Assembly (NCBI RefSeq): GCF_006345805.1
Contig: NC_043005.1
Coordinates: 94,116,001 to 94,180,000, forward strand
DNA: 64,000 nucleotides
Direction: 5' to 3'
Source: Octopus sinensis
Taxonomy: Eukaryota
Under the pieces are notes generated by a model that saw only the letters and a list, made by a program, of their open reading frames with translations, did no database searches and was not told where the DNA came from. Position numbers and translations under genes: made by a program. Of the stretch, positions 916 through 60,960 are shown piece by piece. The stretch's first letter is position 1. Every line of letters begins with the position of its first letter.

Positions 916-962
<47 letters not shown>

Positions 963-1241
963 TATATTATATATTTATATATACATACATATATATACAT
1001 ATATATATATTTATATTTATATATATATACATATATATATACATATATATATATATTTATATATATATACATACTATATATATATATAATATATATATAT
1101 ATACATACATATATATATACATATATATATATTATATATATATACATACATATATAATACATATATATATATATATATATATACATATATACATATATAT
1201 ATATTTAATATATATACATACATATATATATATATATACAT

Positions 1242-1291
<50 letters not shown>

Positions 1292-1657
1292 CATATATAT
1301 ATAGATATATATACATACATATATATATTTATATATACATACATATATATATTTATATATACATAATATATATATATATATATACATAATATATTATATT
1401 TATATATATATACATATATTATATATTACATACATATTATATATTTATATATATATACATACAATATATATATATATATACATACATATATATATATATA
1501 TACATACATATATATATTATATATATATACATACATATATATATATATATATATACATACATATATATATATATATATACATACATATATATATATATAT
1601 ACTACATATATATATATATATATAATATACATACAATATAATATATTATATACATAC

Positions 1658-2610: not shown

Positions 2611-2856
2611 ATATATAGAGGGCATTATACATACATGCCAGAGGGCATTATACATACCATGCCACACGCTAAGAGGGACAATTAGTCATTTCTACAAAAA
2701 TATTACTAATCCCACCGAATGCAATTTTTCTACTTTGAAAAATTGCATCGGTGGGATTAGTAATATTTTTGGTAGAAATGACTAATTGTCCCTCTTAGCG
2801 TGTGGCATGTATGTATAATGCCCTCTGGCATGTATGTATAATGCCCTCTATATATA
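2611..2856. repeat. Near-perfect fold-back palindrome (~120-bp arms, ~6-nt loop), MITE-like
   Basis: gagggcattatacatacatgcc...gcaatttttc-tacttt-gaaaaattgc...ggcatgtatgtataatgccctc; each arm has a ~22-bp internal tandem duplication. Confidence 0.92.
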
Positions 2857-3001
2857 ATATTATATATATATATACTATAGCATATATATATACACACATA
2901 TATATATATAACCCATATATATATATATATATACACATATATATATATATATACACATATATATATATATATACCATATATATATATATATATACACTAT
3001 A

Positions 3002-3051
<50 letters not shown>

Positions 3052-3068
3052 TATATATATTATACACA

Positions 3069-3153
<85 letters not shown>

Positions 3154-3320
3154 TTGTATGTGTGTGTGTGTGTATATATGTGTGTGTATATATTTTGTGT
3201 GTATATATATATATATAATATATATCATCATCATCATTTAGCGTCCGCTTTCCATGCTAGCATGGTTGGACATATATATATATATATGTGTATATAAATA
3301 TATATATGTGTGTATATATA
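2857..3320. repeat. (TA)n/(CA)n/(TG)n microsatellite
   Basis: Directly visible. Confidence 0.95.
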
Positions 3321-19312: not shown

Positions 19313-20914
19313 TCATTTTCTTGCTTTCTTTGGTTGGGATAGTTCTGCGATTGCATTCGTAGTGTCTGTCGTAGCAAACTGCAGGACTGGGGAGCTTAGG
19401 GGCATGGGAAGGGTAATTATTTGTTGGGTTCCATTGTTTTGATCAGTGGATTGGAGGGCAGCTGATGGCTGAAAGTTTAGAAGAGAACCGTCTGGCAGTG
19501 TAGGGGCGGCATACACTACTCCTTGAGGGGTCTGATACATGACAAATCCAGGGGTCATAGTCGTGGCCGATGTCGTACCATGCTGAGCCGTGGCAGGTAC
19601 AGACATAAGGTTTACAGTCTGGTTTTGGGTGTTGTTTGTACTTGTCGAAACCGACGTGGGTGATGTCGTGGATGCTGAAGCTGTTAGTTGTAAGGTTTCC
19701 CCGCTTACTGAAGTGACCGTCGTTGGGCTACTCATGTTTGTATTATTACTGGTGTTGCCAGATATATTGGCTATAGACACTACTTGTGTGTTAGGTAATC
19801 GGTACACAGGCGCGGCTGCCGTCTGGGCGATTTGTTGGGTCCCCTGTTGAAAGGGGATTGTAAATTGCGTCCCTGGCTGCAAAATAGCCGTTAGACTAGG
19901 CGATACCTGCATGGAGATATTAGTGTTTGTGTTGCCATTGCTGGTGGTAGAATGCGTCGAGGCGGTGGTAGCATGAGCAGCAGTGACAGAAACCGGCTTA
20001 GTCGTGGTAGCAGAGCTTGATGGTATCGTTGATAGAGTGGAAGGCACCAGCGAGGCCAGGGGTAACTGATTCTGACCGACACCAGTCGAAGTAACGTACA
20101 GGGACGTTGATTGTGGCGGTGGAGGCGACGATGTAATGGCGTTACCTATAAGTTGAGATCTGTTTAGCACCTGGTCCCCTGGCATCTGGGCCAAAAGGGG
20201 TTTCAAATCAGCTTTATTTTCATCCTCCACTGAATACGTTAGTTCAGTTTCTTCGAATCCGGTAGGGTTCATACGTTGTTGATGGGAAGGACCATCAGCA
20301 GAAGTGTCCGGGGAATTTAAACAGGTTTGGATAAGGGCTTTTCCGCTGTCACTCGTTATCATGGGTTGAAGCTTGCGAGTAGCGAATGTATATACATGTC
20401 CCGTTTCACTCGCCACAAGCAGCATTACCTGAGTACCAGTTAATGTAGATAATTCATAAGCTTTTTTCATGATCCCAGTTTTTCTTTTACTGAACGTTGT
20501 ATACCTGCGAAGTTTATTTTGAATAAATTCCATTTTGATTTTGACACGACCTTTTGTCTTTTTGCCAGGTTTTAGTCCATCGGGCGGTCGTCTAACCTGA
20601 TGTTGGCTTTGGTTTTGTTGATGTGACTGTGATTGTAAATGTAAATCGTTTCCAATGCAATCACTTTCTGAATCTGAATCCGAATTATCGTCACCAAGTT
20701 CGTTATTGGAATGTGTTGAAACCATGGTTGTCTGCATCCTGCTGCCTGGAGCCAAACTCAAGTGTTTAGAGTCAGCCCCACTCGGAGCGGTCGATGCAAT
20801 TCCCGAAGTTTTGAATACGCTTTGATCCACTAGTAGTCTACTACCATTTGTTATGTTATCTGAATGGACGTACTGCGATACTGTTAACGTTTCACAGTGA
20901 TTAGAATTCTGCAT
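19313..20914 (-). CDS. SRF: Serum response factor (MADS-box transcription factor), 533 aa from the first ATG, uninterrupted ORF
   Basis: GKKTKGRVKIKMEFIQNKLRRYTTFSKRKTGIMKKAYELSTLTGTQVMLLVASETGHVYTFATRKLQPMITSDSGKALIQTCLNSPD is the SRF MADS+SAM core (~20305-20551), followed by the SRF-typical TGFEETELTY motif and an S/T/Q-rich C-terminus. The ORF track starts at TTG 20920; first ATG is at 20914. Confidence 0.97.
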   Translation of the reverse strand: MQNSNHCETLTVSQYVHSDNITNGSRLLVDQSVFKTSGIASTAPSGADSKHLSLAPGSRMQTTMVSTHSNNELGDDNSDSDSESDCIGNDLHLQSQSHQQNQSQHQVRRPPDGLKPGKKTKGRVKIKMEFIQNKLRRYTTFSKRKTGIMKKAYELSTLTGTQVMLLVASETGHVYTFATRKLQPMITSDSGKALIQTCLNSPDTSADGPSHQQRMNPTGFEETELTYSVEDENKADLKPLLAQMPGDQVLNRSQLIGNAITSSPPPPQSTSLYVTSTGVGQNQLPLASLVPSTLSTIPSSSATTTKPVSVTAAHATTASTHSTTSNGNTNTNISMQVSPSLTAILQPGTQFTIPFQQGTQQIAQTAAAPVYRLPNTQVVSIANISGNTSNNTNMSSPTTVTSVSGETLQLTASASTTSPTSVSTSTNNTQNQTVNLMSVPATAQHGTTSATTMTPGFVMYQTPQGVVYAAPTLPDGSLLNFQPSAALQSTDQNNGTQQIITLPMPLSSPVLQFATTDTTNAIAELSQPKKARK

Positions 20915-21254
20915 TGTCAACGAGAAAGGAATAATTTACCAAATTAAACGAACGACCGTCAACAGGAAAGCCATAACGGGAAAGTGAGGAACGAATTACA
21001 TCCAAGTATTCAATAACTACACAAATATATACTTCCGCCAAAAAAGTTCATTACGATTCGCTATTGTCAAATATAAAGAAAACTAATAAATAACTACGAC
21101 ACAAACACTAATGATTATTTAAGGGAAACTACTATATTGTCAGGCATTCGCAATATAACTGTCAGCAAAATAACTGTGTATTTGCGTGTATGCAATGAAA
21201 CTAGCGCGGAAGAATATGTGAGGTTGGTCGTGTTGTGTTACCCGTATCAAGTTT

Positions 21255-21332
21255 GGAAGTACGGGGTTCCCATATATGGATGGCACGGCCAAATATGGCG
21301 CACGTGGAATGTGTGTGTGATTGACCCGCCCC
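21255..21332. promoter_or_regulatory. Putative SRF proximal promoter: Ets-like GGAAGT (21255-21260), E-box CACGTG (21301-21306) and GC box CCCGCCCC (21325-21332) around the CArG pair
   Basis: Motifs read directly; short motifs occur by chance, so support comes from clustering in a CpG-rich patch. Confidence 0.55.
21270..21298. promoter_or_regulatory. Two perfect CArG boxes (SRF binding sites): CCATATATGG 21270-21279 and CCAAATATGG 21289-21298
   Basis: Both match CC(A/T)6GG exactly, 9-bp spacer, ~360 bp upstream of the SRF ATG. Confidence 0.85.
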
Positions 21333-22029
21333 TCGCTTCACTCACTCTCTCTCTCTCTTCGTTTAATATTCTTCTTATCACTAACTCTTTCCCCCTCCTT
21401 CTCTCCACTCCTCTATCTTTTAGTCTTTCTCTAAAAAAAAAAGAACCTTCTCCTCTTACCCTCTCTCATTCTCTGTGCAACAGTAACATACCGCTCCCAC
21501 TTCGACTATTTGTCTTGTTGGTACTGACGATAAGCTTTCAATAAACTATGGTAGCCACTGAATGTCACTTTTCTTAATTAAAGTTTGCCCATTCATATTT
21601 TTTCTTAATATTAAAATAATTCATGAAAACAGAGATAAAGATCAATTTATTGATAAAAAAAATACCTGTAATATGCAGAACTCCCCAACTTTACTCAATA
21701 TTTTGTTCACTATCAAAATAATTCATTGTGCGTCTAATTATAATTTTTCTTTGATCAAAGTAAATTTCATATTAAAGAATAGTAATTGTAGATTATTCCT
21801 TATAAAAAAACACAAGAAATAAATCTTTAATTATTAAATATTCATTTTATTTTAAACTTATCAACATAAAAGCAGAATCGAAATTCTATTGCAGGCGAGT
21901 AAGTGCTTCTGTAATAAAGAAAGGGCAACTGTCGCATGTTGCGTGCTTTTTTTACTACTAACTTTCACAAAAGCGTGTTTGTTCGTGTGAGAGGCTCTGA
22001 CAACTCGAGGTTTTATTTAGAACCACTTC

Positions 22030-22622
22030 TCTCTCTCATTGCATCTGTCTATCTTTCTACCTTATGTTCTCTTACTGTTTTCTCTCACTTTTTAACACTC
22101 ATTTTTCTCTGTCTATCTATCTGTCTGCCCGTCCATCTGTTTGTCTATGCCTTTCTCTCTCTAAATTAATTTTTCCTTCCTCATCTAATCTTCTATCCTT
22201 TCCTCTCTTTTCTTCCATTATGCTTCACTTTTTCTCGTTCTCTTTATAACTTTTAATCTCTCATACTTTCATTTATGTTGTTATCTCTCATATTCTTTTA
22301 ATCTCTTCTTATACTTTCCTTCTATTTTACTAATTTCTCTCCTTCTACATACCTCCTCCGTATTTCTTGTAGGCACCCTATCTTGTCTATCTTCCCTCCT
22401 CCTTTTCTCACATTCCTATTTTCGTTTTCATTTCTGTTTCTCTTGATCTTTCTGTCTCGCCTTTTTCTTTTCTCCATTATATCTCCATCTCTTTACTTCT
22501 CTTTTTACTACTCCCCTTTCTCCATCTTTAAACCACCACCACCTCCTTTTCTTCTTCTTCTTCTTCTTCTTCTTCTCTTCTTCTTCTTCTTCTTCTTCTT
22601 CTTCTTCTTCTTCTTCTTCTTC
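22030..22622. repeat. Polypyrimidine tract ending in a (TTC)n microsatellite (~22548-22622)
   Basis: Directly visible. Confidence 0.9.
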
Positions 22623-22654
22623 TTTACTGACCTTTCACTCATATTCTTACCATT

Positions 22655-22860
22655 ATCTTTTTTCTGCGTTTCAGTCATTAGACTGCGGCCATACTGGAGC
22701 ACTGCCTTGAAGAATTTTAGTCGAAGGAATTGAGGCCAGTACTTATTTTTTAAATCTGGTACTGTTGGTCTTTTATGTCCAACAGGTAAATTACAAGGAT
22801 GTTAACAAACCAACTCTGGTTGTCAAACGGTGATGGTTGACAAACACACCCACAAACCCC
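22655..22860 (-). mobile_element. SINE 3' half
   Basis: gtttcagtcattagactgcggccatactggagcactgcc is the reverse complement of the SINE tail. Confidence 0.65.
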
Positions 22861-39667: not shown

Positions 39668-42600
39668 CCTTAAAATCCTTAAAAATGTTTTAGCCCGAAG
39701 GCCGCGGCCATGCTGGGGCACCACCGCTGAATGAGCTACACTAACTTGTGAATCCACCTCTGTTATGTGGCACTTGATCAACGAAGGAGTTCGATGCTGC
39801 TGCCCGCATCCGCGTCTCCTGTCGTGAGGTAGGCTCATCTGGGACTCCCGACAAGAAGAGACCCAGTTTAGTTTTAAAGAAACCCACATCCACACCATGT
39901 AAGTCTCTCAGGCATTTAGGGAGGATGTTAAAGAGCTGTGGTCCTCTGAAACCCAAGCTGTTGCAGTATCTGGACCTGTATTTTGATGGTGATGTTGGAA
40001 TCCTTGGCACCATGCAGTGGCGCCCCGTTCTGCGGTTGGAGTAACTTTGAATGCCAAAGTTTGGGACAAGACCCTCCAGGATTTTCCAGATGTATATCAC
40101 TGCATATCTCTCCCGCCTCCGCTCTAGGGAGAAGAGGTTTAATACCTTCAGTCTTTCCCAGTAGCTGATATTTTGCATTGAGACGATTTTCTTTGTGTAG
40201 CTTCTCTGAATTGCTTCGAGTTCTGTTGTTAGTTTTATATTGTGTGGTGACCAAAGTTGGGAGCAGTAGTTCAAGCGGCTGAGGACGAATGTTTTCCATA
40301 GGACCATCAGTGTCTCCTTCTCTCTTGTTCTGAAAGTTCGGAGAATCCATCCAGCTAGCCGTCTGCATTTTATCACCAGATTAGCAATATGCATTTGGAA
40401 AGATGCATCATTGCTCATGTCAATGCCCAGGTCACGCACTGATTTTGACTCAGGGATTGCAATTCTTCCTGGGCCAGTGTATCCAGTCTTCACGTCATTT
40501 ACCTTTGTGTGCCAGTAGCGCAGGGCCTGGAACTTACCTGCATTAAACTGCATGTTGTTGTCCTCAGCCCACCTGTATATTGTGTCCAGCTCATGTTGCA
40601 GATGCGCAATATTTTCAGGGTTTTGTATTGCCTGGGAGACTTTTGTGTCATCTGCATAGCTAGCAAGGGTGGTCATCGTAGCAACTGAAGGCATGTCTGA
40701 AAGGGCCACTATGAACATCAGTGGCCCCAAGACAGTGCCCTGAGGGACACCGCTTGTTATTTGCGTTTCCTTGGAGGTGGCTCCATTGCTCACAACTGCC
40801 TGTTTTCTGTCTTTTAGGAAGTTGTGCAGCCACTCTCCAAGTTTCCCGCTTATGCCGAGACCACGCAGTTTGTGACAGATCACACATGGTCGACTTTATC
40901 AAAGGCTTTTGCAAAGTCGAGACCATTCCGAAATATAACACATCCACATTTGAGCCATTTAGTAGCTGTTTCAACACCCAGTCATAGTGTTGCAGGAGCT
41001 GTGTTAGGCAGCCTCTACCTGGTCGAAATCCATGCTGGGTGTCAGACAGCAAGTCATTTTCTTCAAGGAACATGATTAGTTTCTTACGGACTATTCGTTC
41101 CATGACTTTGCTGATGTGTGAGGTCAGAGAGATAGGCCTATAATTTTTAGCATCTGCTCTGCTACCTCCCTTATGGATAGGGCATATCACCCCCTCTTTC
41201 AATTTGACTGGGAGCTTACCACATGCAAGAAAGCTCTGAAAAAGAAGCTGTAGCAGTTTTGCAAGGGCTCGATTGCACGATTTGAGAAGGATCGCTGGGA
41301 ATCCATCAGGTCCAGCAGCTGAGTTTGTGTCAATCTCATCAATGGCTAGTGTGATATCATCATCTTCGATGTTGATGTACTCAATTTTTGTCTCTTTGGC
41401 CGCAAGTAAAGTGGCAAAGAATTCTTCTGGGTTGTTTACTTGCCTGTGTCCTAGAGGTGTAGTGAACACACTTTGGAACTGTTCGTTCAGTATTTCACTT
41501 ATCCTCGTGGGATTTCCTGTGAGAGAGCCATCTTTTTGGAAGAGAGGTCCTATTCTCTGGTGCACTGTGGCTGTCTCTTTGGCAAACTTAAAGAAAGCTT
41601 TAGGGTTTGATTTTATATTTTCTATTACCCAAGCTTCTTTATCTGCTCTCTCCTTTTCATGGGACTGATGTAGACTTTTCTCAGTTTCCATTAGCATTCT
41701 TTCGAGCCGAGACTTCTCACCACTTTTGGTGTGCTTGCTCAGGCGGTTTGCAATCCTTGTCCGTCGTCTCATAAGAATCCTCCTTTCTCTAGGGATCCTG
41801 TTTTTGTTCTTGTGTGTGTGCTGGCCCTGCACACTGGGACATATTTGTCACATATGGCTTGTATTATGGACATGAAGTGTTTGTGTTTCATGTTTATGTC
41901 CGGTGTGGAGAGACATCCAGGCCAATCCTGTTTGAGGATCTCTTTCTCAATCAACTTCCAGTTGGCTTTATGAAAGTTTAAGTTGGAGAGATGGTGGGTG
42001 CTTCGTATAGGCTGTGTGTCTACGGGGGCTTTTGTTCCATACATAGACAGCTCTACTATGTTGTGATCCGAGATCATTGTCGGCATCACATTAACATTAT
42101 GGATAATATCCATATTGTTTGTGAAGCAGAGATCCAGTATATTATCTGCCTTGTTGGTTGCAGAACTATTTGCTCCATGAAAGAGGCATTTGTGAGATGG
42201 AGCAGGGACTCCACCTGTGCCTGCTGATGGTGTGTCATCCCTGGGAGCATCTGCCCCCCAGGCCATTCCACATTGGGGAGGTTAAAGTCACCCATGAAGA
42301 ATACACTGTTGTGCTGTTCAAGGTTGGTGAGGACTTCTCCTATTTTTGTTAGGCAGTCTTCAAACATGCCTGAGTGTTTTGGGGCATCTGGTGGGCGATA
42401 TGTAGTGCATATGACGATATTCAGTTGTCTTATGTGTACAATTTGAGTTTCACATACTGAGTTTGAATATGACAGCAGGACCTGGGGCGTGAGGTCATCT
42501 CGGATGTACATTGCAACTCCACCATGGCTCCTCCCTTTTCTATCTGTGCGTATGACTGCATATTGCGGCATGTGTATTTCTGCATCACCTATATCGGGTT

Positions 42601-43620
42601 CAAGATGCGTTTCTGTGAGTGCCATGCATATAGCTTGATTGCATGTCACAAGGTCTCTCAGGAATGAAATGTTCTTTTTACAGTTTCCGCGCAGCAGCCC
42701 TCCTACATTCAGTAGAAATATTTTTGTGGTGTGTGTGTTGGTGTCTGTGGTGGCCATCCTGCATCTGTTGGAGGTGGCCTTATGTGGTGGTAGTTCCAGC
42801 TTTGTGCTTGTAGCCAGGTCAGCTGCTGAACAATTTTTTGTGCCATGCACAAAAAAAGATTGCTGTTCAGCTGCCGCCCTTCTCACATCTGGGTGAAGCT
42901 GGCCACCTGTTGGGTTTCCGCGCACCACATCTGCATACCGTCTTTCAGTAGTGGTCAGTCAGTGCACTTTTTTCCCTTCTTTTAACTTTTTCTTTTTGTT
43001 CTCCCTGAGGGAGGGACCTCTGTCTCGCGTCCGTGCGGTTTTGGTAGGGCCTCCGATGTGCAAAGCGACAGTGTGCACCTTCGACGCCGTACCAGCAGTC
43101 CCCCCTCAGGTAGAATTTGCAGATGTTTCTTTCTTTGCCCTTATAGTTCTTGCTGGGGTCCTTTTGTTTTCTCTGGACAGGGTTTCTTTTAGCTTTGATT
43201 TTGTCGCCTTTTACCTCCTGTTTCCCATCAATTTTAGGGTGCTTTTCTTTTCTTGCGGCCATCGCACCTCTTTGGTCTTCAGTTGTGGTGTTGGGAGCTG
43301 GACATGTGTCATTGTTTCCCTGTGTTCTAGGTTTCTCCGTTTGGTTCTGGATGTTTTCTTCATCCTTTTGGCCTTCCCTGGTGCCGTCACCTCCTAGGAT
43401 GATGTCCAGGGTGTCTACATGTTGCCTGATTAGAGCGTACGAACGGATAAATTCTCGCTTCTTTCGCTCTATCTGGGCGGTGGTTCTCGAAAAATTGTTG
43501 CTTTTCAGCGCCGCTGCAATAATATTGTTCGGCGAGTCGTCCTCAGCAATCTTCCAAGCGCGGACGAACAATTGCACCTCTCTCGCAGACCAGTTTCTTG
43601 CCATTTTCGTCTAGTGAAAT
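39661..43620 (-). mobile_element. Near full-length CR1-type LINE (ORF1 plus APE-RT ORF2, 3' tail with TTTTAAGGA repeats), frameshifted
   Basis: APE motifs LLNVGGL, LTETHL, GDFNLP, LDLCFTN; RT motifs NYRPISLTS, GVPQGTVLGP, YADDTK, VRDLGI; C-terminal LFSLERRRER; ORF1 at 42945-43604. Confidence 0.93.
42945..43604 (-). CDS. LINE ORF1 with a Myb/SANT(trihelix)-like N-terminus and a CCCH zinc finger
   Basis: NWSAREVQLFVRAWK...IIAAALKSNNFSRTTAQIERK and CKFYLRGDCWYGVEGAHCRFAH; domain calls by eye. Confidence 0.6.
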   Translation of the reverse strand: MARNWSAREVQLFVRAWKIAEDDSPNNIIAAALKSNNFSRTTAQIERKKREFIRSYALIRQHVDTLDIILGGDGTREGQKDEENIQNQTEKPRTQGNNDTCPAPNTTTEDQRGAMAARKEKHPKIDGKQEVKGDKIKAKRNPVQRKQKDPSKNYKGKERNICKFYLRGDCWYGVEGAHCRFAHRRPYQNRTDARQRSLPQGEQKEKVKRREKSALTDHY

Positions 43621-46200: not shown

Positions 46201-47654
46201 ATTTTCACAGACAATAAATACGATGTTATTTGTTATTGTCTGAGATTTTGGTCTAATTTGAGAGGATAATACAAAAGTCATGGATGATTTAGTGATTTAC
46301 TGCAAAACCCATGGTGGCCAAAATGATCTGAACGGTTGCTTTTACTCCGTGTTGTAGTATATTTAACCGGTAAACTCTAATATTTTGAATTTGTTTACGT
46401 GACGGTTCGTTTACTAAACATTAGTAAGAATATCTGCAGTGTACTTTGTTAATATAATGCCACTTACTCCTTTACCAATTCGTCAGCAGATTATTAAGCT
46501 TCGAAAGAAGGATAATTTAAGTATTAGGTCTATTGCAAAGATTGTTAACAAGTCAAAAAGTGTTGTTCACGGTATTCTTAAGGTCTACGATGATTGTGGT
46601 TCGTGTGAAGCAAGAAAGTTTACAGGTAGGCCAAGAAAAACGACCAAGAGAGAAGCAAGAAAGTTTACAGGTAGGCCAAGAAAAACGACCAAGAGAGAAG
46701 ATCGTGCTATGATAAAGTTGGTTAAAAAGGACAGATTTAAAACTGCTGCTGCTGTTTCTCGGAAAATGAGCATTGTATTGAAGAAAACTTTATCTCGAAA
46801 AACTGTGTCTCGTCGTTTAGTTGAACATGACCTACAAGCAAAAGCACCTGCAGTGAAGCCACTGATCAGCTCCAAGAATAAAAAGTGTCGTCTTACCTTT
46901 GCAACCGAACACATGTTGTGGTCTCAAGAAAAATGGCAAACGGTGCATTTCAGTGATGAATCTAAGTTTATGTTATTTGACTCACAGATGGGAAAAGGTA
47001 TATTTGTCGAAAAGTAGGCGAAAAATTGTCGCCTAAATGCCTTAAGACTAGTGTTAAATTCGGTGGAGGAAGTGTCATGGTTTGGGGGATGATATCTGGA
47101 GATGTTGTGGGCCCTTTGGTGTGATTACATGGAAAGGTAAATGCAGGAGTTTATATACAAATTGTAAAAGATCATGTCTTGCCTGTGCTGAGAAATTCAA
47201 CTAAGCGACCACCCATATTCATCCAGGACAATGCCCCATGTGACAAGGCTAAGGTGGTCATGAACTTCCTCAAGGCTGAAAAGGTTATAGTTATGGATTG
47301 GCCTGCTCAAAGCCCAGATCTCAATCCTATTGAAAATGTGTGGAATATTCTAGGAGAACATTCAAAAGTCAGAAATCCTAAAACAACAGAGCAATTATGG
47401 AATGCCTTCCTCATGCAGTCGAAGATGTCAAAGGGTGATTGAAGCTAAAGGGCTTCACACTAAATATTAAATAATTCCAGTATTCTCTGTTATTTTTTAT
47501 TATTTTGTTATTTTTTCAAACGTTCTGATCATTTTGGCCACCATGGGTTTTGCAGTAAATCACTAAATCATACATACCTTTTGTATTATCCTCTCAAATT
47601 AGACCAAAATCTCAGACAATAACAATTAATATTGTATTTATTGTCTGTGAAAAT
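46201..47654 (+). mobile_element. Tc1-family transposon (DD34E) with ~134-bp TIRs, disrupted transposase
   Basis: TIRs 46201-46334 and 47521-47654; HTH-GRPR, HFSDESKF, QDNAP-34 aa-E (WPAQSPDLNPIE). Confidence 0.93.
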
Positions 47655-50806: not shown

Positions 50807-53800
50807 GTCTGTGTGTCTGTGTGTGTGTGTCAGTGTGTGTGTGTGTGTGTAGGAAGTGAAGGATAAAAATGTGGACCTTTTATTTCCGTACAGACAACAT
50901 AACACTATCAACCTCATATCACCACAACAACATTTTATCCCGTCAAAAACTGATTGATTCTATCCCTTTCACCTACGACCTCAGCTACGTCAGCCGAAAG
51001 TTAAATCAACAGAGGATCACGTTTATACCTACAAACGTATGTCCATTTTTATAACTGCAACCACATTATATATACCATACTTAACACACACCATGACACA
51101 CCACAAATGTACCCTGAACGAGATGGACTATTCATTATTATACATCAGTTCCACACATTTACCCTGGTTCCATTTCGGACAACTGCACAAAAATTTGCCA
51201 TTTGACACATGTATGTAAACAAATTCCTTTCTTAAAAATTTCAATTCATTTTCTTTTTCAATTTACCTTTCTATACACTTTACACAAATATTTGATTAAA
51301 CAACTAAAACACTTCACATTTCGAACATGAACGTAAGCTACTTCCATTCTTACAAATCTAACTTTATTTTCTTGCTTTTAACACAACTTTCAATACACTT
51401 TACACACTCTGTCGCTATACTTGCATAAACAATTTCTTTCAGCTGCAAATATTTCTTTCTTTTCCTTCCACGGTCATTCACATTACAATTTCTATCTTTA
51501 AGTAACTTTCACCCTTTCTTTTTCACATAAAATGCTACCGAAAAAGAGAAGTCGCCTCGGCCGCCATACTGCAGCAGCAGCGGCGCAAAAGGCGATTATC
51601 GCAAACGAGTCCTCCGACAAAAAGGCTTTCAGACTTTCACAGAGCGCCTTACGTTCAGTGCAATCACGAGCTGCTGAAAATTTACAACAGCGCAACGCAC
51701 GCCTAGCAAAAATGGCTTCATACGATGCTGCTTCCAGGGCTTCAGAGGGTCTGGAAACAAGGTCGAAGCGCATGGCCATAAAGGCTGCTGCTGTTGCTGC
51801 ACAAAGGGCTTCACAGAAACAACAAAGGGCCACTCGACTGGCTACAAACGCTGCGGCTACTGCTGCTTCAACATTTTCCACACATTCCCACGACTCAGAC
51901 CAGCACAGCAACGTTCTACATTCCAGCGGAACAGTCGACGCCGCGATGCTACCCGCGGTCTGACGAGTCCAAACAGCCCTTACTGGCATCTACGGGCTTT
52001 CAAGTATGAGCCCAACTTCAATTACTCGATGCACGCTGACATAAATATTGGGGAAATGTGAATCAATTGCCAATTCTGTAATGCTAAAAAGTGGGCTGAG
52101 GAACCACCTGCAATGTGCTGCTTAAACGGTAAGGTCAGCTTGCCCCCTCTCGGGAACTGCCAGACCCTTTGAAGGAATTACTTACTGGTTCCACCTCAAG
52201 GTCATCAAAATTCCTTCAACTCATCAGGAAGTACAATTGTGCATTTCAGATGACTTCTTTCGGGGCTAACGTTGTCAGAGAAACTGGTTGGATGCCTACT
52301 TTCAAGGTCCAGGGCCAGGTGTACCACCTTACTGGGTCACTCCAGCCACTACAAAATTGCAAACCTTCGTTCCTTCAAATTACAATAGGCAACTTGATGT
52401 GCGTTTCGGCGTAATTCCACAACCTGCAAACACTGACGCTGACAATTTCGACAGGGACGTGCTGCTCAGTCTGCAAAACATGCCTCATGAGCACAACAGC
52501 TACATTCGCAGTTTCAAATACGCCTTGGAAACAGCCCCTTCACCAACATTCACCATTGTCATCGATGCTGACAAAAGACCTTCTGGGGAGCACGCACGCC
52601 GATATAACGCTCCTTCGTGCAATGAAGTGGCCATAGTTCTCCATGGTGAACAGCACAATAAGCGAGACATAGTTCTTCAAACCCGCGACAGGGACGTGCT
52701 GCTCAGTCTGCGTATTAATGAAACGCATCGGTCATATGACGCCCTGCAGTATCCCCTTCTTTTTACCGTATGGAGAAGACGGGTACCATTTCGGCATTCC
52801 TCACCACAAACCAAACGAGCCCACTGCTGCGACATCTAAAACTGTTTCATGCATGGCTTTTTACTCATACCGCTTCATGACAAGGCATAATGATTTGAAC
52901 CCCTTGCACAGATCACGGGAACTGTTTCACCAGTTTGCAGTTGACATGGCTGCAAAGATGGAGTCCGAGAGACTGTGCTTCATCAAATTGAATCAGAAGC
53001 AGCTGCGCTCAGACTCCTACATCCATTTGCGTGATGGCATCAGGAATGACACTGACGCTCGCAATATCGGCAAAATGTGCATTCTCCCCTCAACCTATAC
53101 AGGGGGCCCACGGTACATGCACGAGCGAACACAAGACGCTATGACTTACGTTCGGCATTATGGGCAACCCGATTTATTCATTACCTTTACATGTAACACA
53201 AAGTGGGTTGAGGTAACGCGAGAACTTCTCCCAGGGCAGCAGTACTGTCATCGCCATGATATTATTGCAAGGGTTTTCAGGCAGAAACTGGCTAAGCTCA
53301 TTCATTTAATAAAAAAAGGGGCAGGTTTTTGGGCCTGTTAACTGCCACATGTATACTGTTGAGTGGCAGAAAAGAGGGTTGTCACACGCGCACATTTTGC
53401 TTTGGTTGGTCAACAAAATAGACCCAACAGTTCTTGATGATCTCATTGCAGCAGAAATTCCGGACCCAACTGTTGACCGGCAGCTGTACAACATTGTGAA
53501 GGCACACATGGTACACGGTCCGTGCGGTCCTGGTTTTCAAAAGTTCTCCTCATGCCACAAAGACCACGTGTGCACTAAACGGTACCCAAAAAGGTTCGTG
53601 AACGAGACCCAGACCGGCCGCGACGGATACCCACTGTACAGAAGAAGGCACCCTGACAATGGTGGATTCAAGTGGATAATAGGTGGGTAGTACCGTACTG
53701 TCCATTTCTGATGAAAACTTTTAACGCTCACATAAATGTGGAGTTCTGTCATTCAGTCAAGTCTATAAAGTATATATGTAAATATGTTAACAAGGGTTCT

Positions 53801-56800
53801 GACGCTGCCATGTTTGGCCTTCAAAAGGATAATAGCATGGACGAGGTGTCACAGTACTTGGCAGGTCGGTACATAAGCAGTGGTGAAGCTTTTTGGCGGA
53901 TATTCGGGTTTCCACTTCACCAAAGGCACCCCGCCATCATACAACTAGTGGTTCATTTGGAAAATGGCCAGCGAACTTACTTTACTGAACAGACTGCAGC
54001 TGAATTGGCGGCAAATCCAAAACAAACAACTTTGACCGGTTTCTTTAGGCTTTGCCAACTTGACACATTTGCTAAAACACTTTTATACCCTCAGGTCCCG
54101 TCCTACTACGTGTGGTCAAACAACAATTGGGTGCGTAGGAAGTCGGGTCAGGATGTTGAAGGACATCCTGGTGTCAAGTTTAACAGTTGTCTAGGAAGAG
54201 TCTACACTGTACCTCCAAACCAAAATGAGTGTTTTCACCTGCGCCTTCTCCTACATGAGGTTTTAGGCCCACAAAGTTTTCAAGACATCAGAACTGTTGA
54301 TGGTGTATTATGTGATACTTTCCACGAAACCTGTTTTCGGCGTGGACTTTTGGAAGATGATTCACAATGGGGCGCCACTATGGCGGAGGGTGTTTCATTA
54401 AAATCTCCTAAAAAAAATCAGATCGCTTTTCGCTATTCTACTACTATGGTGTGACTTGGCTGATTCCGCCTCTTTATGGCTTACCTACAAAAATTATATG
54501 TCTGAAGATTTCCTGCGTCACGCTCAATCGCTACATCCATCAATGGAGGTCGGGTACACTGACCTCATTTACAACAGGGCGCTGCTTGAAATCGAAGATA
54601 CTGTACTTGATATAAACGGTAGTGCCTTGCCGGTCTATGGCCTACCTTCAACAAACCGGGAAGGCACAAACACTCTTCACATTTGCTGCGTGAGACATGT
54701 TTTAATGTTGACGAGCTTGCCGAGTACATAGCCGACAATGAGCCAAAGCTCCTTCCAGAACGGAAGTTCGCTTACAACTCCGTTGTTAATTCAGTCCGGG
54801 CCAAAGCTGGGGGGATTTTTTTCCTGGACACTCCTGGGGGCACTGGGAAAACTTTTGTCAACAAATTAATATTGGCTGAGATTAGGCGAACACAAGGCAT
54901 TACCCTAGCTATGGAATCATCTGGAATTTGCGGCTACTTTGTTGCCAGGCGGCAGGACAGCTCACTCCACTTTCAAGCTCCCGCTTGACTTAGCGAAGAC
55001 TGAGACACCAACTTGCAACGTCAGTAACAGCTCCGATCAGGCAGAAGTCTTCAGACGATGCAAGCTTATCGTTTGGGATGAATGCACGATGGCCCACAGA
55101 GGTGCTCTTGAGGCACTAGATAGATCTCTCAGAGACATCAAACACTCTTCAGCTCCCATGGGAGGCATAACACTTCTTTCAGGGGACTTCCGACAAACAC
55201 TTTCCGTTATTCCCAAAGGGACTAGAGCTGATGCAGTAAGTGCGTGTCTTAAGTCATCCACATTGTGGCCACTGGTGAAGACTCTCAAACTTCACACCAA
55301 TATGCGTGCTCATATGCGACGTGATATCACATCAGCAGCATTTTCTCACACCCTCCTTGCACTTGGCGAAGGCAAAATACCAGGGGATGAAAATGGTAAT
55401 ATTGCCATCGATTCCATTTGTACCATTGTTAAAACGCCTTCTGATCTCAGAGATGCAGTGTTCCCAGATCTACAAGCTAATATGGATTGGATTGGCCAAA
55501 GGGCTATTCTGGCCCCGAGGAATAAAACTGTTCACCATATTAATGATGAAATGCTAAAACTCATTCCTGGGGATGTCTATGTATATAAGTCTATCGATAC
55601 AACTCCTGACCCAGATGACGTCATCAACTATCCAATAGAGGTACTCAATTCCTTTGAGCCCCCCGGACTACCACCACACATTCTCAAACTTAAAGTTTGT
55701 GCCCCTATAATGCTCATTAGAAATTTGGTTCTCCCAAAACAATGCAATGGAACACGTTTGATTGTTAAGTCCTTATCTCCCAATCTGATTGAGACCACCA
55801 TTATCACAGGGTGCGGTCGAGGCAACGTTGTGCTCATACCTAGGATGCATCTTTTCCCATCAGGAGCAGACCTACCTTTCATATTTCGGAGGTCCCAGTT
55901 CCCAGTAAGGCCATGCTTCGCAATGTCAATTAACAAAGCGCAGGGTCAAACGCTGTCTGTGGCGGGAATACATTTGGGAGAGCCATGTTTCTCTCATGGT
56001 CAGCTTTATGTTGCCTGCTCGCGTGTCGGCAGCAACAGTGATGCTTTCGCATTCGTTCCACAACGAAAAACAAAAAACATTGTGTACAAGGAGGTTTTAT
56101 AGGATTACTACGTTTCATCATTTTCGAACACGTTAGTATTTCACTTACATACGACTCTCTTTTATGATGGCAGTTACATTTTTAGGCGTTTCCTGACATT
56201 AATTCACACTTAACCAACACCAGTCCTTCGTTCACCTCTATTTCTATCCATTCATCATCAAACCACCAGCCTCATCTTCTATATCCAACGTACATGACAC
56301 ATCTACCCCCTATATCTACACTCTCACTGTTAAAGTTTACATAAGCGACAACACGATCGCAACATACACTTTGGAAACTAAGCAACAGATCATTTTATAC
56401 AACTTCAAATTTAATCATAATGCCCATCAATGAAAACATCTCCACCACTGTGTTGTGATTCATCTATTCAGCACCACTACAGTCTTACCGGTCTGACATA
56501 TGGTGAGTAGATGCTATTGTTCTATAATTTCTAAATTACCCATATTTACTTACCCATGCTTCATTCCCCTCTTGCCTACATAGGGCATCCATTCTCTTTT
56601 AACACAGCATGAAGTTTTGTAACAGTACATCCGCTGCCGTTCGTGGAAAACGACAAGACCCAATTCACCTGCGAACGTTTTACACCACCTTCCACGACTA
56701 TCAAATTCTTACAATTATGAGAACAATAACATGGCTCTTTTCAAGGCAACATCGCATTCAATTCTTACATCATTCTACGAAGGGTTAGGAACCCCTTTAC

Positions 56801-56944: not shown

Positions 56945-57000
56945 ATATATATACATACAGATATATATATGCATATACATATATATATATATATACATAC

Positions 57001-57081
<81 letters not shown>

Positions 57082-57098
57082 ATATACATATACATACT

Positions 57099-57152
<54 letters not shown>

Positions 57153-57270
57153 CTATATATATATACATATTCATATATACATACATATACATACAAACAT
57201 ACATATATATATATATATATTCATATATACATACATATACATACAAACATACATATACATACAAACATAC

Positions 57271-57327
<57 letters not shown>

Positions 57328-57335
57328 CATACATG

Positions 57336-57368
<33 letters not shown>

Positions 57369-57388
57369 ATACATATATACATACATAA

Positions 57389-58069: not shown

Positions 58070-60960
58070 ACTTCTCTTTGTGGCTGGTGACTTCAATGGG
58101 CATGTTGGACAACATGCTGGGGGCTTCCATGGTGTACATGAAGGCTATGGTTATAGTTCCTGCAATGAGGAGGGAACCAGGCTGCTGGAGATCTGCGATG
58201 AAAATGATCTTATGGTTTGCAACACTAACTTCAGGAAACCTACCAGCCACCTAGTCACCTACCAATCGGGCTGACATACTAGCCAAATTGACTACATCCT
58301 TGCCAGGAAAAGGGAAAGATGGCTGCTTCCCAGGCGAAGAATGTACCCCACAACATAGACTGGTAGTTAGTGACTTTAAGATCAGGACTAAGAGGACGAC
58401 CAGAAGACGACCAACATGGAGAAGAGAGATCTGGAAGCTTAAAGATCCTGCGAATGGACAGAGACTTAGGAACATATTACTTGAAGCCTTTAAAGAAGTA
58501 GAAGGGGATATAGCTTCACATGGGGTAGATGACAACTGGAGGTTTCTAAGAGACAACCTGCTGAGAGTCGCTGACCAGATCTGTGGTTGGTGCAAAGTCC
58601 CCTCTCGACCCAAAATAACATGGTGGTGGAACAATGTTGTAGATAGGATTATTAGAGAAAAGAGACAGGCTTGGAAGGACTGGAAGGGTGGTGGTAGCAG
58701 GGAATCGTATCAGACTGCCAAAAAAGAAGCTAGGAAACAGGTTTATTTAGCCAGAGGGCAAGCAGATAAGAAAAAATTTGCCAATGTTCTGCGCCGTGAG
58801 GACAAAAGACTTGAGGTATTCTGTGTTGCAAGACAGTGTGTGAGAGAGAATCGTGATGTTGTCCGCATGAATGATGGTTCTCTTGCACTGAATGAGGCTG
58901 CAAAGAGAGAGGGCTGGAGAAGCCACTATGAAAGTTTGCTGAACAAAGAAAATGAAGAAAGAGAGTCTGCAGATTGTCGACCCGACAGAGGGACCAGCTA
59001 TCCGAGTTGACAGTACCTTGGTAGTTAAAGCAATTAAGAGTATGAAGGCAGAGAAAGCCCCCGCCTATCAGGAATTACTGCAGAGATGCTTAAAATATCT
59101 GGCAGTGTCGGCTATAGCCTAGTCACCCATATAGTTAACCAGGTGATACACAAAGGAGTCATACCCAATGACTGGTGTAGCAGCATAATAGTCAACTGCT
59201 ACAAAAGTAAAGCTGACGCTCTAGATACAAATAATTACAGAGGTATCAAGTTGCTGGATCAAGTAATGAAGGTTACGGAGAGGGTCATAGCCCAACTAAT
59301 TAGAGAGAGAGTTAGTTTAGATGAGATGCAGTTTGGGTTAGTGCCAGGGAAAAGTACCACTGATGCTATATTCTTGGTAAGACAGCTGCAGGAGAAATAC
59401 CTAGCCAAAGATAAGCCCCTGTACCTGGCTTTTGTTGACATGGAGAAAGCCTTCGACAGGGTTCTCCGATCCCTTATATGGTGGTCAATGAGGAAACTAG
59501 CGATAGATGATTGGTTAGTGAGAGATGTGCGAGCCATGTACAGGAACGCTGCAAGTAAAGTGAGGGTTGGCAATAAGTACAGTGAAGAATTCCGGGTAGA
59601 GGTAGGGGTCGACCAAGGTTCAGTCCTCAGCCCCCTCCTATTTATCATAGTTCTCTAGGCAATAACGAAGGAATTCAAGACAGGATGCCCCTGGGAGCTC
59701 CTATATGCTGATGACCTTGCTTTAATTGCTGAGTCACTATCAGAACTGGAGGAGAAGTTTCAGGTGTGGAAGCAAGGATTAGAATCGAAGGGCCTTAGAG
59801 TCAACCTAGCTAAAACCATAGTCCTAATATGTAGGAAGATTGACAAATCACAAACGCCTTCAGGTAGATGGCCCTGCTCGATCTGTAGAAAAGGCATAGG
59901 TAGAAACTCTATAAGATGCACCAAGTGTAAGCTATGGACACATAAGAGATGCAGCAATGTCAAAGGGAGGCTAACTAGGAAGATAGTTTTTGTATGTGGC
60001 AGATGCTCAGGAGCAATAAACACTGAAAATGCTCAGAGAACAACTTCCGCCACATTCCAGGGAGAAAAAACTAGAAATAGTTGATAGCTTCCATTACCTA
60101 GGTGACCAAGTCAGTAGTGGGGGAGGGTGTGCTGAAAGTGTAACTGCTAGAGTAAGAATAGCCTGGGCAAAGTTCTCTGCTGGTGACAAAAGGCCTCTCG
60201 CTCAGAGTAAAAGGCAGACTGTATGAACAGCCATGCTACATGGAAGTGAAACATGGGCTGTGACTGCTGAGCATATGCATAAGCTCGCAAGAAATGAAGC
60301 CAGTATGCTCTGATGGATGTTTAATGTCAGTGTGCATACTCGACAGAGTGTAAGTACCTTGAGAGAAAAGTTGGACCTAAGAAGCATTAGTTGTGGTGTG
60401 CAAGAGAGACGTTTGCGCTGGTATGGTCATGTTGCGAGAATGGATGAAGATAGTTGTGTGAAAATGTGCCGCACCCTAGCTGTTGAGGGAACCTGTGGAA
60501 GAGGTAGACCCAGGAAGACCTGGGATGAGGTGGTGAAGCATGACCATCGAACTTTAGGTCTCACCGAGGAAATGACTAGAGACCGAGACCAATGGAAGTA
60601 TGCTGTGCGTAAGAAGACCCGGCAGGACAAGTGAGGCCATAACCCGTGGCCTCTACCTGGGATGTAGCCAGTCCACTTATGCATACCTTTCCTTCTTGGG
60701 ACACAAAACTCTATTTGTGACGACCTGTTGAGGCAAGTGAAAATCAAAATCGAAATTGATCGACATCAATGGTAATTGTAGCTGTGATACCAGTGCCGGT
60801 GGCACGTAAGAGAACCAGCCGAACGTGGCCGTTGCCAGCGCTGCCCCGACTGGCCTCCGTGCCAGTGGGACGTAAAAAGCATCATCCGATCGTGGCTGTT
60901 GCCAGCCTCGCCTGGCCTCCATGCCGGTGGCACGTAAAAAGCACCGTCCGATCGTGGCCG
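58070..60960 (+). mobile_element. RTE LINE, 5'-truncated, with ~60-bp subrepeats in the 3' UTR; disrupted
   Basis: AGDFNGHVG (APE), NYRGIKLL, AFVDMEKAFD, QGSVLSP, LYADDL, GRGRPRKTW. Confidence 0.93.

What the first reader, a model, noticed from the sequence alone, without database searches (positions are those of the whole stretch)
21255..21332. Tandem CArG boxes upstream of SRF: candidate deeply conserved autoregulatory promoter
Seen: two perfect CArG boxes 19 bp apart start to start, with an Ets-like GGAAGT 9 bp away, an E-box and a GC box, ~360 bp upstream of the ATG. Established: the mammalian SRF promoter has two closely spaced CArG boxes plus Sp1 and Ets sites and is autoregulated; Ets next to CArG is the TCF ternary-complex arrangement. 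Inference: the SRF feedback loop is ancestral to bilaterians or has evolved convergently in this lineage.
Basis: partly seen in the sequence, partly recalled or inferred. Interest (0 to 1): 0.72.

Follow-up and report, generated by a model that had tools for sequence, protein, structure and literature searches.

The report
Ancient self-binding switch before octopus SRF
Just upstream of an octopus gene for the transcription factor SRF lie two perfect SRF binding sites, part of a three-site module found with nearly the same spacing before the SRF gene in other molluscs, a worm, a scorpion and a turtle (with a 9-bp insertion in a sea urchin), so the self-regulating loop known from mammals is probably as old as bilaterian animals.

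Summary
Two perfect CArG boxes lie at window 21270-21279 and 21289-21298, 19 bp apart and 365/384 bp upstream of the ATG of an intronless SRF gene on the minus strand.

The pair is not chance. About 1e-4 such pairs are expected per 500 bp. It sits in a 104-bp block with 90 columns invariant across four cephalopods, while the flanks are at background.

Every other SRF locus I could fetch carries the same layout upstream of its ATG: box A, 19-20 bp, box B, 22-23 bp, box C. These are abalone, scallop, annelid, scorpion and turtle; a sea urchin has it with a 9-bp insertion. In 560 kb of held sequence this three-box layout occurs only at SRF loci.

The E-box centre varies. The GC box and a TEAD-like CATTCC are conserved in cephalopods only.

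An anthozoan metagenome contig has the same triple inside an SRF intron.

Best reading: an ancestral SRF autoregulatory module. SRF binding and the transcription start site are untested. Vertebrate conservation was already published; I found no report for invertebrates.

The parts
19313..20914 (-). SRF coding sequence, a single exon of 533 aa from ATG 20914 to the stop at 19313-19315
   Evidence: ORF list. Pfam SRF-TF 7.8e-21. Orthologues named SRF in Argonauta, Acanthosepion and other molluscs. Core about 95% identical to human SRF in PDB 1SRS/1HBX/1K6O.
20936..20974 (-). Conserved upstream ORF in the 5' leader (MAFLLTVVRLIW-stop), within a conserved block just 5' of the ATG
   Evidence: All five cephalopod sequences have a uATG at -54 to -62 and 9-12 codons ending IW-stop 22-25 nt before the main ATG. 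It is present in the poly(A)-tailed mRNA contig L006. The last 50 aligned columns (window 20901-20950, including the first 14 coding bases) are 40/50 invariant.
21205..21217 (-). ATATTCTTCCGCG motif downstream of the boxes, at -303. Possible core-promoter or Ets/E2F-like element; function unknown
   Evidence: Similar motifs lie 3' of the box cluster: roughly 17-40 bp past the last box by my count. Pecten GTATTCTTCCGCA, Diadema ATATCTCTCCGCG, scorpion GTATCTATCCGCC, Haliotis ATATTCATACGCC. Coordinates.
21229..21332 (-). Cephalopod-invariant promoter-proximal module
   Evidence: 90 of 104 columns are invariant in Octopus, Argonauta, Sepia and L005. 70 of 75 are invariant in 21226-21300. Flanks score about 3 of 25.
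21247..21256 (-). Decayed third CArG box (box C), CCAAACTTGA, 23 bp after box B
   Evidence: The same offset holds CCAAACATGG in Pecten, CCATACATGG in Haliotis, CCATAAATGG in Capitella, CTTTATATGG in the turtle and CCATATATGG (+22) in the scorpion.
21255..21260 (+). Ets-like GGAAGT, overlapping the start of box C
   Evidence: Present in 3 of 4 cephalopods; Argonauta has GGAAAT. TTCC sits at a similar offset in Diadema and contig L028. It is absent in Pecten, Haliotis, Capitella, the scorpion and the turtle.
21270..21279 (.). CArG box B (proximal to the gene), CCATATATGG, at -365
   Evidence: Invariant in all cephalopods.
21289..21298 (.). CArG box A (distal), CCATATTTGG on the gene strand, at -384
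   Evidence: The identical sequence occupies the box A position in Pecten and Capitella.
21301..21306 (.). E-box CACGTG
   Evidence: Only CANNTG is kept: CATGTG in Argonauta and CAGCTG in the decapodiforms.
21306..21311 (+). GGAATG (CATTCC on the gene strand), TEAD/MCAT-like
   Evidence: Invariant in the four cephalopods. The TEAD assignment is from general knowledge and is untested.
21325..21332 (-). GC box, GGGGCGGG on the gene strand
   Evidence: Invariant in the four cephalopods. GC boxes also lie near the module in the turtle and Capitella, but at other positions.

Best explanation
The element is the octopus copy of an ancient autoregulatory module placed just 5' of the SRF gene.

Proposed mechanism:
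- SRF dimers bind the two perfect CArG boxes. Ancestrally there were three boxes spaced 19-20 and 22-23 bp, about two helical turns, so all sit on one face of the DNA.
- SRF thereby couples its own transcription to the activity of its cofactors, giving a feedback loop as in the mouse Srf promoter.
- In cephalopods the third box has decayed. The module has acquired or kept lineage-specific neighbours: a GC box, a CATTCC, a CANNTG and a GGAA core.

Shown here: the motifs, their improbability, strong purifying selection across cephalopods, and the same three-box layout before SRF in molluscs, an annelid, an arthropod, an echinoderm and a vertebrate.

Inferred, not shown: SRF occupancy, the direction of the feedback, the position of the TSS (probably between about -300 and -150), and homology rather than convergence between phyla.
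For: - Motifs at the stated coordinates, 365/384 bp upstream of the SRF ATG.
- Chance expectation of 1.25e-4 per 500 bp for such a pair.
- 90/104 invariant columns in four cephalopods against background flanks, although the proteins are only 58-82% identical.
- The same A-19/20-B-22/23-C layout upstream of SRF in Haliotis, Pecten, Capitella, Centruroides and Malaclemys, and in Diadema with a 9-bp insertion.
- In 560 kb of held sequence the triple layout occurs six times, always at an SRF locus; I estimate about 0.005 expected by chance from the box rates in that call.
- Close pairs of perfect boxes occur nowhere else in 379 kb or in 193 kb of metagenome loci.
- Mollusc flanks are alignable: spacer CCGTG, and GAACCCC...CCAAACATGG in Pecten. 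A mollusc-only profile finds the Capitella module at E=2e-4.
- The octopus SRF DNA-binding core is about 95% identical to the human core crystallised on a CArG box.
- Literature: two CArG boxes lie within 60 nt upstream of the mammalian SRF start and mediate SRF-dependent regulation (PMC7203814). The loop is conserved in human, rodents, zebrafish and fugu (PMC555765).
- mRNA contigs of a cephalopod begin downstream of the module, at -150 at most.
Against: - There are no binding, expression or TSS data for any invertebrate here.
- The cephalopod mRNA contigs reach only to -150, so the TSS could lie anywhere upstream of that.
- In some mRNA-like metagenome contigs (L015, L016, L020) CArG-like boxes lie inside the 5' leader close to the ATG. 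The position of the module relative to the TSS may therefore differ between lineages.
- Outside molluscs and the annelid the sequence between the boxes is not alignable: nhmmer gives E = 0.12 to 2.7, and the turtle is not found.
- Only one species per non-mollusc phylum was sampled. A beetle locus could not be read.
Confidence: 0.78

Rival explanations
1. Convergence. Tandem CArG boxes at two-turn spacing arose independently upstream of SRF in several phyla, because any SRF gene gains from self-binding and cooperative SRF binding favours about 20 bp spacing. On this view the loop is not inherited from the bilaterian ancestor.
For: Between phyla only the boxes and their spacing are shared. The spacers are unrelated, and a mollusc profile does not significantly detect the scorpion, urchin or turtle modules. 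Box sequences differ (for example CCTTATAAGG in the scorpion against CCATATTTGG in molluscs), and the distance to the ATG varies from -204 to -442.
Against: Two successive spacings (19/20 then 22/23), in the same order relative to the gene, recur in six independent lineages and nowhere else in 560 kb. The layout is present in all three bilaterian superclades with no sampled exception. Homology is demonstrable within Mollusca and extends to the annelid.
Confidence: 0.15
2. The conserved block is bound mainly by factors other than SRF, for example YY1 on GCCATATTT, TEAD on CATTCC, Sp/KLF on the GC box or an Ets factor. On this view it is an ordinary housekeeping promoter without SRF feedback.
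For: Box A is preceded by G in cephalopods, Pecten and Capitella. This gives GCCATATTT, which resembles the YY1 core as I recall it. The GC box, CATTCC and GGAA are invariant or nearly so in cephalopods.
Against: What is shared across phyla is specifically CC(A/T)6GG, with the outer CC and GG kept while the A/T core varies. That is the SRF recognition pattern. The accessory motifs are not shared outside cephalopods. The SRF DNA-binding domain is nearly unchanged from human.
Confidence: 0.05
3. The motif pair is a chance occurrence in AT-rich sequence and has no function.
For: The window as a whole has no excess of CArG boxes: 6 found against 6.6 expected.
Against: About 1e-4 pairs are expected per 500 bp. 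The block is invariant across cephalopods and the layout recurs in six other phylum-level lineages.
Confidence: 0.01

Closest known systems
Mammalian/vertebrate Srf promoter with two CArG boxes (Spencer and Misra 1996, 1999; conservation in fish shown by Dieterich et al. 2005, PMC555765)
   Same: - Two consensus CArG boxes about 20 bp apart, directly 5' of the SRF gene, with a GC box nearby.
- The turtle locus read here has CCATATAAGG-20-CCATAAAAGG-23-CTTTATATGG, the same layout as the invertebrates.
- The factor's DNA-binding core is about 95% identical to the human one.
   Different: - In octopus the third box is decayed and the neighbouring sites differ (CATTCC, CANNTG).
- The distance to the TSS is unknown, whereas in mouse the boxes lie within 60 nt of the start (PMC7203814).
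- No binding or induction data exist for the octopus element.
- The octopus gene is intronless.
c-fos / Egr1-type serum response elements (CArG plus adjacent Ets site bound by a ternary complex factor)
   Same: A GGAA-core motif lies 9 bp from a perfect CArG box and is kept in four cephalopods.
   Different: - The Ets-like motif is missing at this position in five other lineages, where a third CArG box occupies it.
- GGAAGT becomes GGAAAT in Argonauta.
- No TCF was examined.
Bilaterian-conserved regulatory DNA segments (Frith 2023, PMC10735318)
   Same: A promoter-proximal element kept next to the same gene, in the same orientation, across protostomes and deuterostomes.
   Different: - That study reports 25 alignable segments. 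In the passages retrieved, its only CArG box is in the Nr2f promoter, and SRF is mentioned only as the factor that binds CArG boxes. I did not read the full list of 25.
- Here conservation lies in motif type and spacing and is mostly not alignable between phyla, so alignment-based screens would miss it.

Membership tests
SRF autoregulatory CArG promoter (vertebrate Srf type) | Lies directly 5' of an SRF orthologue | tested here: met
   The boxes are at -365/-384 from the ATG of a 533-aa SRF ORF.
SRF autoregulatory CArG promoter (vertebrate Srf type) | Two or more consensus CC(A/T)6GG boxes about 20 bp apart | tested here: met
   Two perfect boxes 19 bp apart. The turtle has 20 bp.
SRF autoregulatory CArG promoter (vertebrate Srf type) | Conserved at the orthologous position in related species | tested here: met
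   Four cephalopods are invariant here. Six further lineages share the layout.
SRF autoregulatory CArG promoter (vertebrate Srf type) | Boxes within about 100 bp upstream of the transcription start | tested here: inconclusive
   There are no TSS data. Cephalopod mRNA contigs reach -150 and do not include the module. Some other invertebrate mRNA-like contigs carry CArG-like boxes in the leader.
SRF autoregulatory CArG promoter (vertebrate Srf type) | SRF protein binds the boxes | not testable with these tools
   Indirect only: the DNA-binding core is about 95% identical to human SRF crystallised on DNA.
SRF autoregulatory CArG promoter (vertebrate Srf type) | Box-dependent induction or feedback on SRF transcription | not testable with these tools
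   Requires reporter or perturbation experiments.
SRF autoregulatory CArG promoter (vertebrate Srf type) | Sp1-type GC box close to the boxes | tested here: met
   GGGGCGGG lies 24 bp 5' of box A and is invariant in cephalopods. Its position is not conserved in other phyla.
TCF-type serum response element (c-fos/Egr1 type) | Ets core GGA(A/T) adjacent to a CArG box | tested here: met
   GGAAGT at 21255-21260, 9 bp from box B.
TCF-type serum response element (c-fos/Egr1 type) | Ets site conserved together with the CArG box | tested here: inconclusive
   The GGAA core is kept in four cephalopods, Diadema and L028. It is absent in Pecten, Haliotis, Capitella, the scorpion and the turtle, where box C sits instead.
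TCF-type serum response element (c-fos/Egr1 type) | A TCF (Elk-type Ets protein with B-box) forms a ternary complex with SRF | not tested
   No cephalopod Elk orthologue was searched for.
Alignable bilaterian conserved non-coding element | Statistically significant sequence alignment between phyla | tested here: inconclusive
   A mollusc profile against 217 kb gave Capitella E=2e-4, Diadema 0.12, the coral intron 0.34 and the scorpion 2.7. The turtle was not found.

The most novel reading that the evidence does not exclude
The three-box SRF self-module (A, 19-20 bp, B, 22-23 bp, C) is a single cis-regulatory architecture inherited from before the cnidarian-bilaterian split and kept at the SRF locus for more than 600 million years.

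It is visible in all three bilaterian superclades. An anthozoan contig (L043) has CCATATATGG-19-CCTTCTTTGG-22-CCATTTTTGG in the intron after exon 2.

That would make it one of the very few promoter-level architectures conserved across Eumetazoa. It would also be one that alignment-based screens cannot see.
Probability: 0.35. Interest if true: 0.8.

Novelty: new member of a known kind. Interest (0 to 1): 0.62.

Why it matters
Regulatory DNA is almost never traceable between phyla. A recent genome-wide search found only 25 bilaterian-conserved segments (PMC10735318).

Here a positive-feedback wiring is recognisable by motif type, number, order and spacing in molluscs, an annelid, an arthropod, an echinoderm and a vertebrate: a transcription factor binding a fixed array of sites before its own gene. 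This suggests that SRF autoregulation belongs to the ancestral bilaterian gene-regulatory kit.

It also gives a compact, experimentally tractable case of about 60 bp for two questions. Why is binding-site spacing preserved when the intervening sequence is free to change? How does a site get remodelled, as when cephalopod box C decays next to a GGAA core?

For cephalopod biology it marks the likely SRF promoter and an activity-responsive element usable in reporters.

Tried and rejected
- **Window-wide CArG enrichment.** None was found (6 against 6.6 expected). Only the pairing and position are unusual.
- **Failed locus look-ups.** The chiton isoform was not on record. The beetle gene range was too long, so no DNA was returned. 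Insects and chitons were therefore not sampled.
- **FAM177-SRF microsynteny.** It is seen in Haliotis and Capitella, but tblastx found no FAM177 in the octopus window.
- **TSS from Logan contigs L003/L004 of Sepia pharaonis.** They are colinear with the genome over 6 kb and end in AT-rich sequence without poly(A), so they are probably genomic and uninformative.
- **Metagenome scan for more SRF loci.** Most hits are mRNA-like contigs lacking promoters, with no close perfect pairs. It did yield the anthozoan contigs L043, L044 and L070 and the leader-box caveat.
- **Two long contigs, L037 and L038.** Their MADS boxes are 87% identical to the query and they have no CArG boxes at all. Their origin is unknown and I did not pursue them.
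- **Cross-phylum sequence homology by nhmmer.** It is significant only for the annelid.
- **Primary papers.** Spencer and Misra 1996, Belaguli 1997 and the CArGome paper are not held. Statements about them rest on papers that cite them or on my memory, and are marked as such.
- **Literature on invertebrate SRF self-CArG boxes.** Searches found nothing.
- **Rejected: retrogene at a new site.** I rejected the idea that the intronless cephalopod SRF is a retrogene inserted at a new site, because the ancestral promoter module is retained.

Full report
**What is in the window**

On the plus strand CCATATATGG is at 21270-21279 and CCAAATATGG at 21289-21298, 19 bp start to start. GGAAGT is at 21255-21260, CACGTG at 21301-21306 and CCCGCCCC at 21325-21332.

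The gene they precede is on the minus strand. It is a single open reading frame with its stop at 19313 and its ATG at 20914, encoding 533 aa. It matches Pfam SRF-TF at 7.8e-21. Its closest relatives are proteins named serum response factor in Argonauta (82%), Acanthosepion (59%), other molluscs and other animals. A partial Octopus vulgaris model is 100% identical over the part it covers. The DNA-binding core is about 95% identical to the human SRF fragment crystallised on DNA (1SRS, 1HBX, 1K6O). On the gene strand the boxes lie at -384 (box A, CCATATTTGG) and -365 (box B, CCATATATGG).

**Is it more than chance?**

The window overall has no excess of CArG boxes: 6 found against 6.6 +/- 2.7 in shuffles. 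The pairing is what is unusual. In 20 Mb of first-order Markov sequence with the window's composition, pairs 10-35 bp apart occur 0.016 times per 64 kb and 1.25e-4 times per given 500 bp.

**Conservation within cephalopods**

I fetched the SRF loci of Argonauta hians (L001), Sepia (Acanthosepion) pharaonis (L002, plus two further contigs) and an unnamed decapodiform (L005). All have an intronless coding sequence. All carry the same two boxes with the same 9-bp spacer (CCGTGCCAT), at -354 to -387.

In the four-way alignment, window 21229-21332 has 90 of 104 columns invariant and 21226-21300 has 70 of 75. The flanks on both sides score about 3 of 25, which is background. The proteins are only 58-59% identical between octopus and the decapodiforms, so this block is more constrained than most of the coding sequence.

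The variable columns are informative.
- The two central bases of the E-box change (CACGTG, CATGTG, CAGCTG), so only CANNTG is kept.
- The Ets-like GGAAGT is GGAAAT in Argonauta.

**Beyond cephalopods**

Every other SRF locus for which DNA was returned has tandem CArG boxes a few hundred bp upstream of the ATG, and they share a three-box layout.

| Species | Locus | Box A | Gap (bp) | Box B | Gap (bp) | Box C | Box A position |
|---|---|---|---|---|---|---|---|
| Haliotis rubra | L009 | CCGTATTTGG | 19 | CCATATTTGG | 23 | CCATACATGG | -333 |
| Pecten maximus | L010 | CCATATTTGG | 19 | CCATATTTGG | 23 | CCAAACATGG | -259 |
| Capitella teleta | L011 | CCATATTTGG | 19 | CCTTATTTGG | 23 | CCATAAATGG | -368 |
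| Centruroides sculpturatus | L014 | CCTTATAAGG | 19 | CCAAAATTGG | 22 | CCATATATGG | -442 |
| Malaclemys terrapin | L012 | CCATATAAGG | 20 | CCATAAAAGG | 23 | CTTTATATGG | -224 |

The urchin Diadema (L013) has CCAAAGAAGG-20-CCTTATTTGG. At +23 it then has CCATATCCG followed by CCATATTTGG, which I read as box C displaced by a 9-bp partial duplication (-440, -420, -388).

In octopus the position 23 bp after box B reads CCAAACTTGA (CCAAACATGA in L005). This is evidently a decayed copy of the Pecten box CCAAACATGG. The sequence between B and C is also shared: GAACCCCGTACTT in octopus against GAACCCCACATTA in Pecten.

**Specificity controls**

- In the 379 kb held at that point, the only pairs of perfect boxes no more than 40 bp apart were the SRF-upstream ones.
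- There were none in 193 kb of metagenome loci.
- I scanned all 560 kb for three boxes (at most one mismatch each) spaced 19/20 then 22/23. This gave exactly six hits, all at SRF loci. From the box rates measured in that call I estimate about 0.005 expected by chance.
- A profile built only from the mollusc modules, searched against 217 kb of non-mollusc loci, ranks the Capitella module first (E=2e-4). Next come the Diadema module (0.12), the coral triple (0.34) and L028 (0.56). The scorpion (2.7) and the turtle (not found) are not detected.

Homology is therefore demonstrable by sequence within molluscs and to the annelid. Between more distant phyla the evidence is architecture, not alignment.

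**A possible pre-bilaterian instance**

A scan of JGI metagenome contigs with the SRF core returned three intron-containing contigs (L043, L044, L070). The encoded protein's best named relative is a Nematostella protein (88% identity), so they are anthozoan.
- They share a perfect CArG 30-37 bp before the ATG.
- L043 also carries CCATATATGG-19-CCTTCTTTGG-22-CCATTTTTGG about 1.16 kb downstream of the ATG, in the intron after exon 2.

This is one contig of inferred origin, and I treat it as a lead.

**Transcription start**

There are no direct data. Three poly(A)-tailed mRNA contigs of another cephalopod (L006-L008) start 150, 50 and 43 nt before the ATG and do not reach the module. They include a conserved 9-12-codon uORF. 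Cephalopod conservation falls to background about 100 bp downstream of box B. A motif ATATTCTTCCGCG at -303 recurs in Pecten, Diadema, the scorpion and Haliotis.

By analogy with the mammalian promoter, where the boxes lie within 60 nt of the start (PMC7203814), I infer a start between about -300 and -150.

One caveat applies. Some mRNA-like metagenome contigs of unknown invertebrates (L015, L016, L020) carry CArG-like boxes inside their 5' leaders. The module's position relative to the start may therefore differ among lineages, or those contigs may be genomic.

**Comparison with what is known**

The vertebrate Srf promoter has two CArG boxes that mediate SRF-dependent regulation (Spencer and Misra, as cited). 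The self-loop was already noted as conserved in human, rodents, zebrafish and fugu (PMC555765).

I found no paper in the searchable library reporting it for any invertebrate. In the passages retrieved from the 2023 catalogue of 25 bilaterian-conserved regulatory segments, the only CArG box is in the Nr2f promoter, and SRF appears only as the factor that binds such boxes. I did not read the full list of 25 segments.

The octopus element is thus a new member of a known kind. The pan-bilaterian three-box spacing appears to be unreported in the library I could search.

**Verdict**

The Ets/TCF, E-box and GC-box parts are lineage-specific decoration at best. SRF binding, the feedback itself and the TSS remain to be shown experimentally.

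Noticed in passing
window 19313-20914 (minus); L001, L002, L005 versus L009-L014: The SRF coding sequence is a single exon in all four cephalopods. In abalone, scallop, annelid, scorpion, urchin and turtle the gene spans 3.7-35 kb with introns. Because the ancestral promoter module is retained, the introns were probably lost in place rather than by retroposition to a new site.
   Followed up: partly
window 20936-20974 (minus): There is a conserved uORF in the SRF 5' leader (octopus MAFLLTVVRLIW-stop). All five cephalopod sequences have a uATG at -54 to -62 and 9-12 codons ending IW-stop 22-25 nt before the main ATG. It is present in the poly(A)-tailed mRNA contig L006. This may be a translational control element.
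   Followed up: partly
L043 1788-1838 (anthozoan metagenome contig Ga0126339_10015675): A triple CArG array with the bilaterian spacing (19, 22) sits in the intron after SRF exon 2. A perfect CArG lies 30 bp before the ATG and is shared with related contigs L044 and L070.
   Followed up: partly
L009 1-1498 and L011 6519-8566: A FAM177-family gene lies immediately upstream of SRF on the same strand in both Haliotis and Capitella, which looks like conserved microsynteny. tblastx found no FAM177 in the octopus window.
   Followed up: partly
window 21205-21217 (minus): A motif ATATTCTTCCGCG lies downstream of the box cluster. It recurs as GTATTCTTCCGCA (Pecten), ATATCTCTCCGCG (Diadema), GTATCTATCCGCC (scorpion) and ATATTCATACGCC (Haliotis). 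It may be a core-promoter, Ets-like or E2F-like element.
   Followed up: no
L015 167-240, L016 22-31, L020 1-28: mRNA-like metagenome contigs of unidentified invertebrate SRFs carry CArG or CArG-like boxes inside the 5' leader, 20-100 nt before the ATG and spaced 18-22 bp. In some lineages the boxes may therefore lie downstream of a start site.
   Followed up: partly
window 39741-42928 (minus), 46439-47017, 52718-56102, 59086-59658, 62031-62720: The rest of the window is rich in transposon remnants. There is a LINE with endonuclease and reverse-transcriptase domains broken into overlapping frames, a Tc1/mariner transposase fragment, a Helitron (Helitron_like_N plus PIF1 helicase), and two more reverse-transcriptase fragments.
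   Followed up: partly
window 917-1366, 2802-3218, 56969-57388; 21340-21480 and 22000-22750: There are extreme AT-rich microsatellite tracts (GC 7-19% per kb). Long CT-rich low-complexity tracts lie just beyond the promoter module on the side away from the gene.
   Followed up: no
L013 17670-17829: The Diadema SRF locus has three perfect CArG boxes within 160 bp in an intron, about 7.7 kb downstream of the ATG. This could be an intronic SRF-responsive element or a repeat.
   Followed up: no
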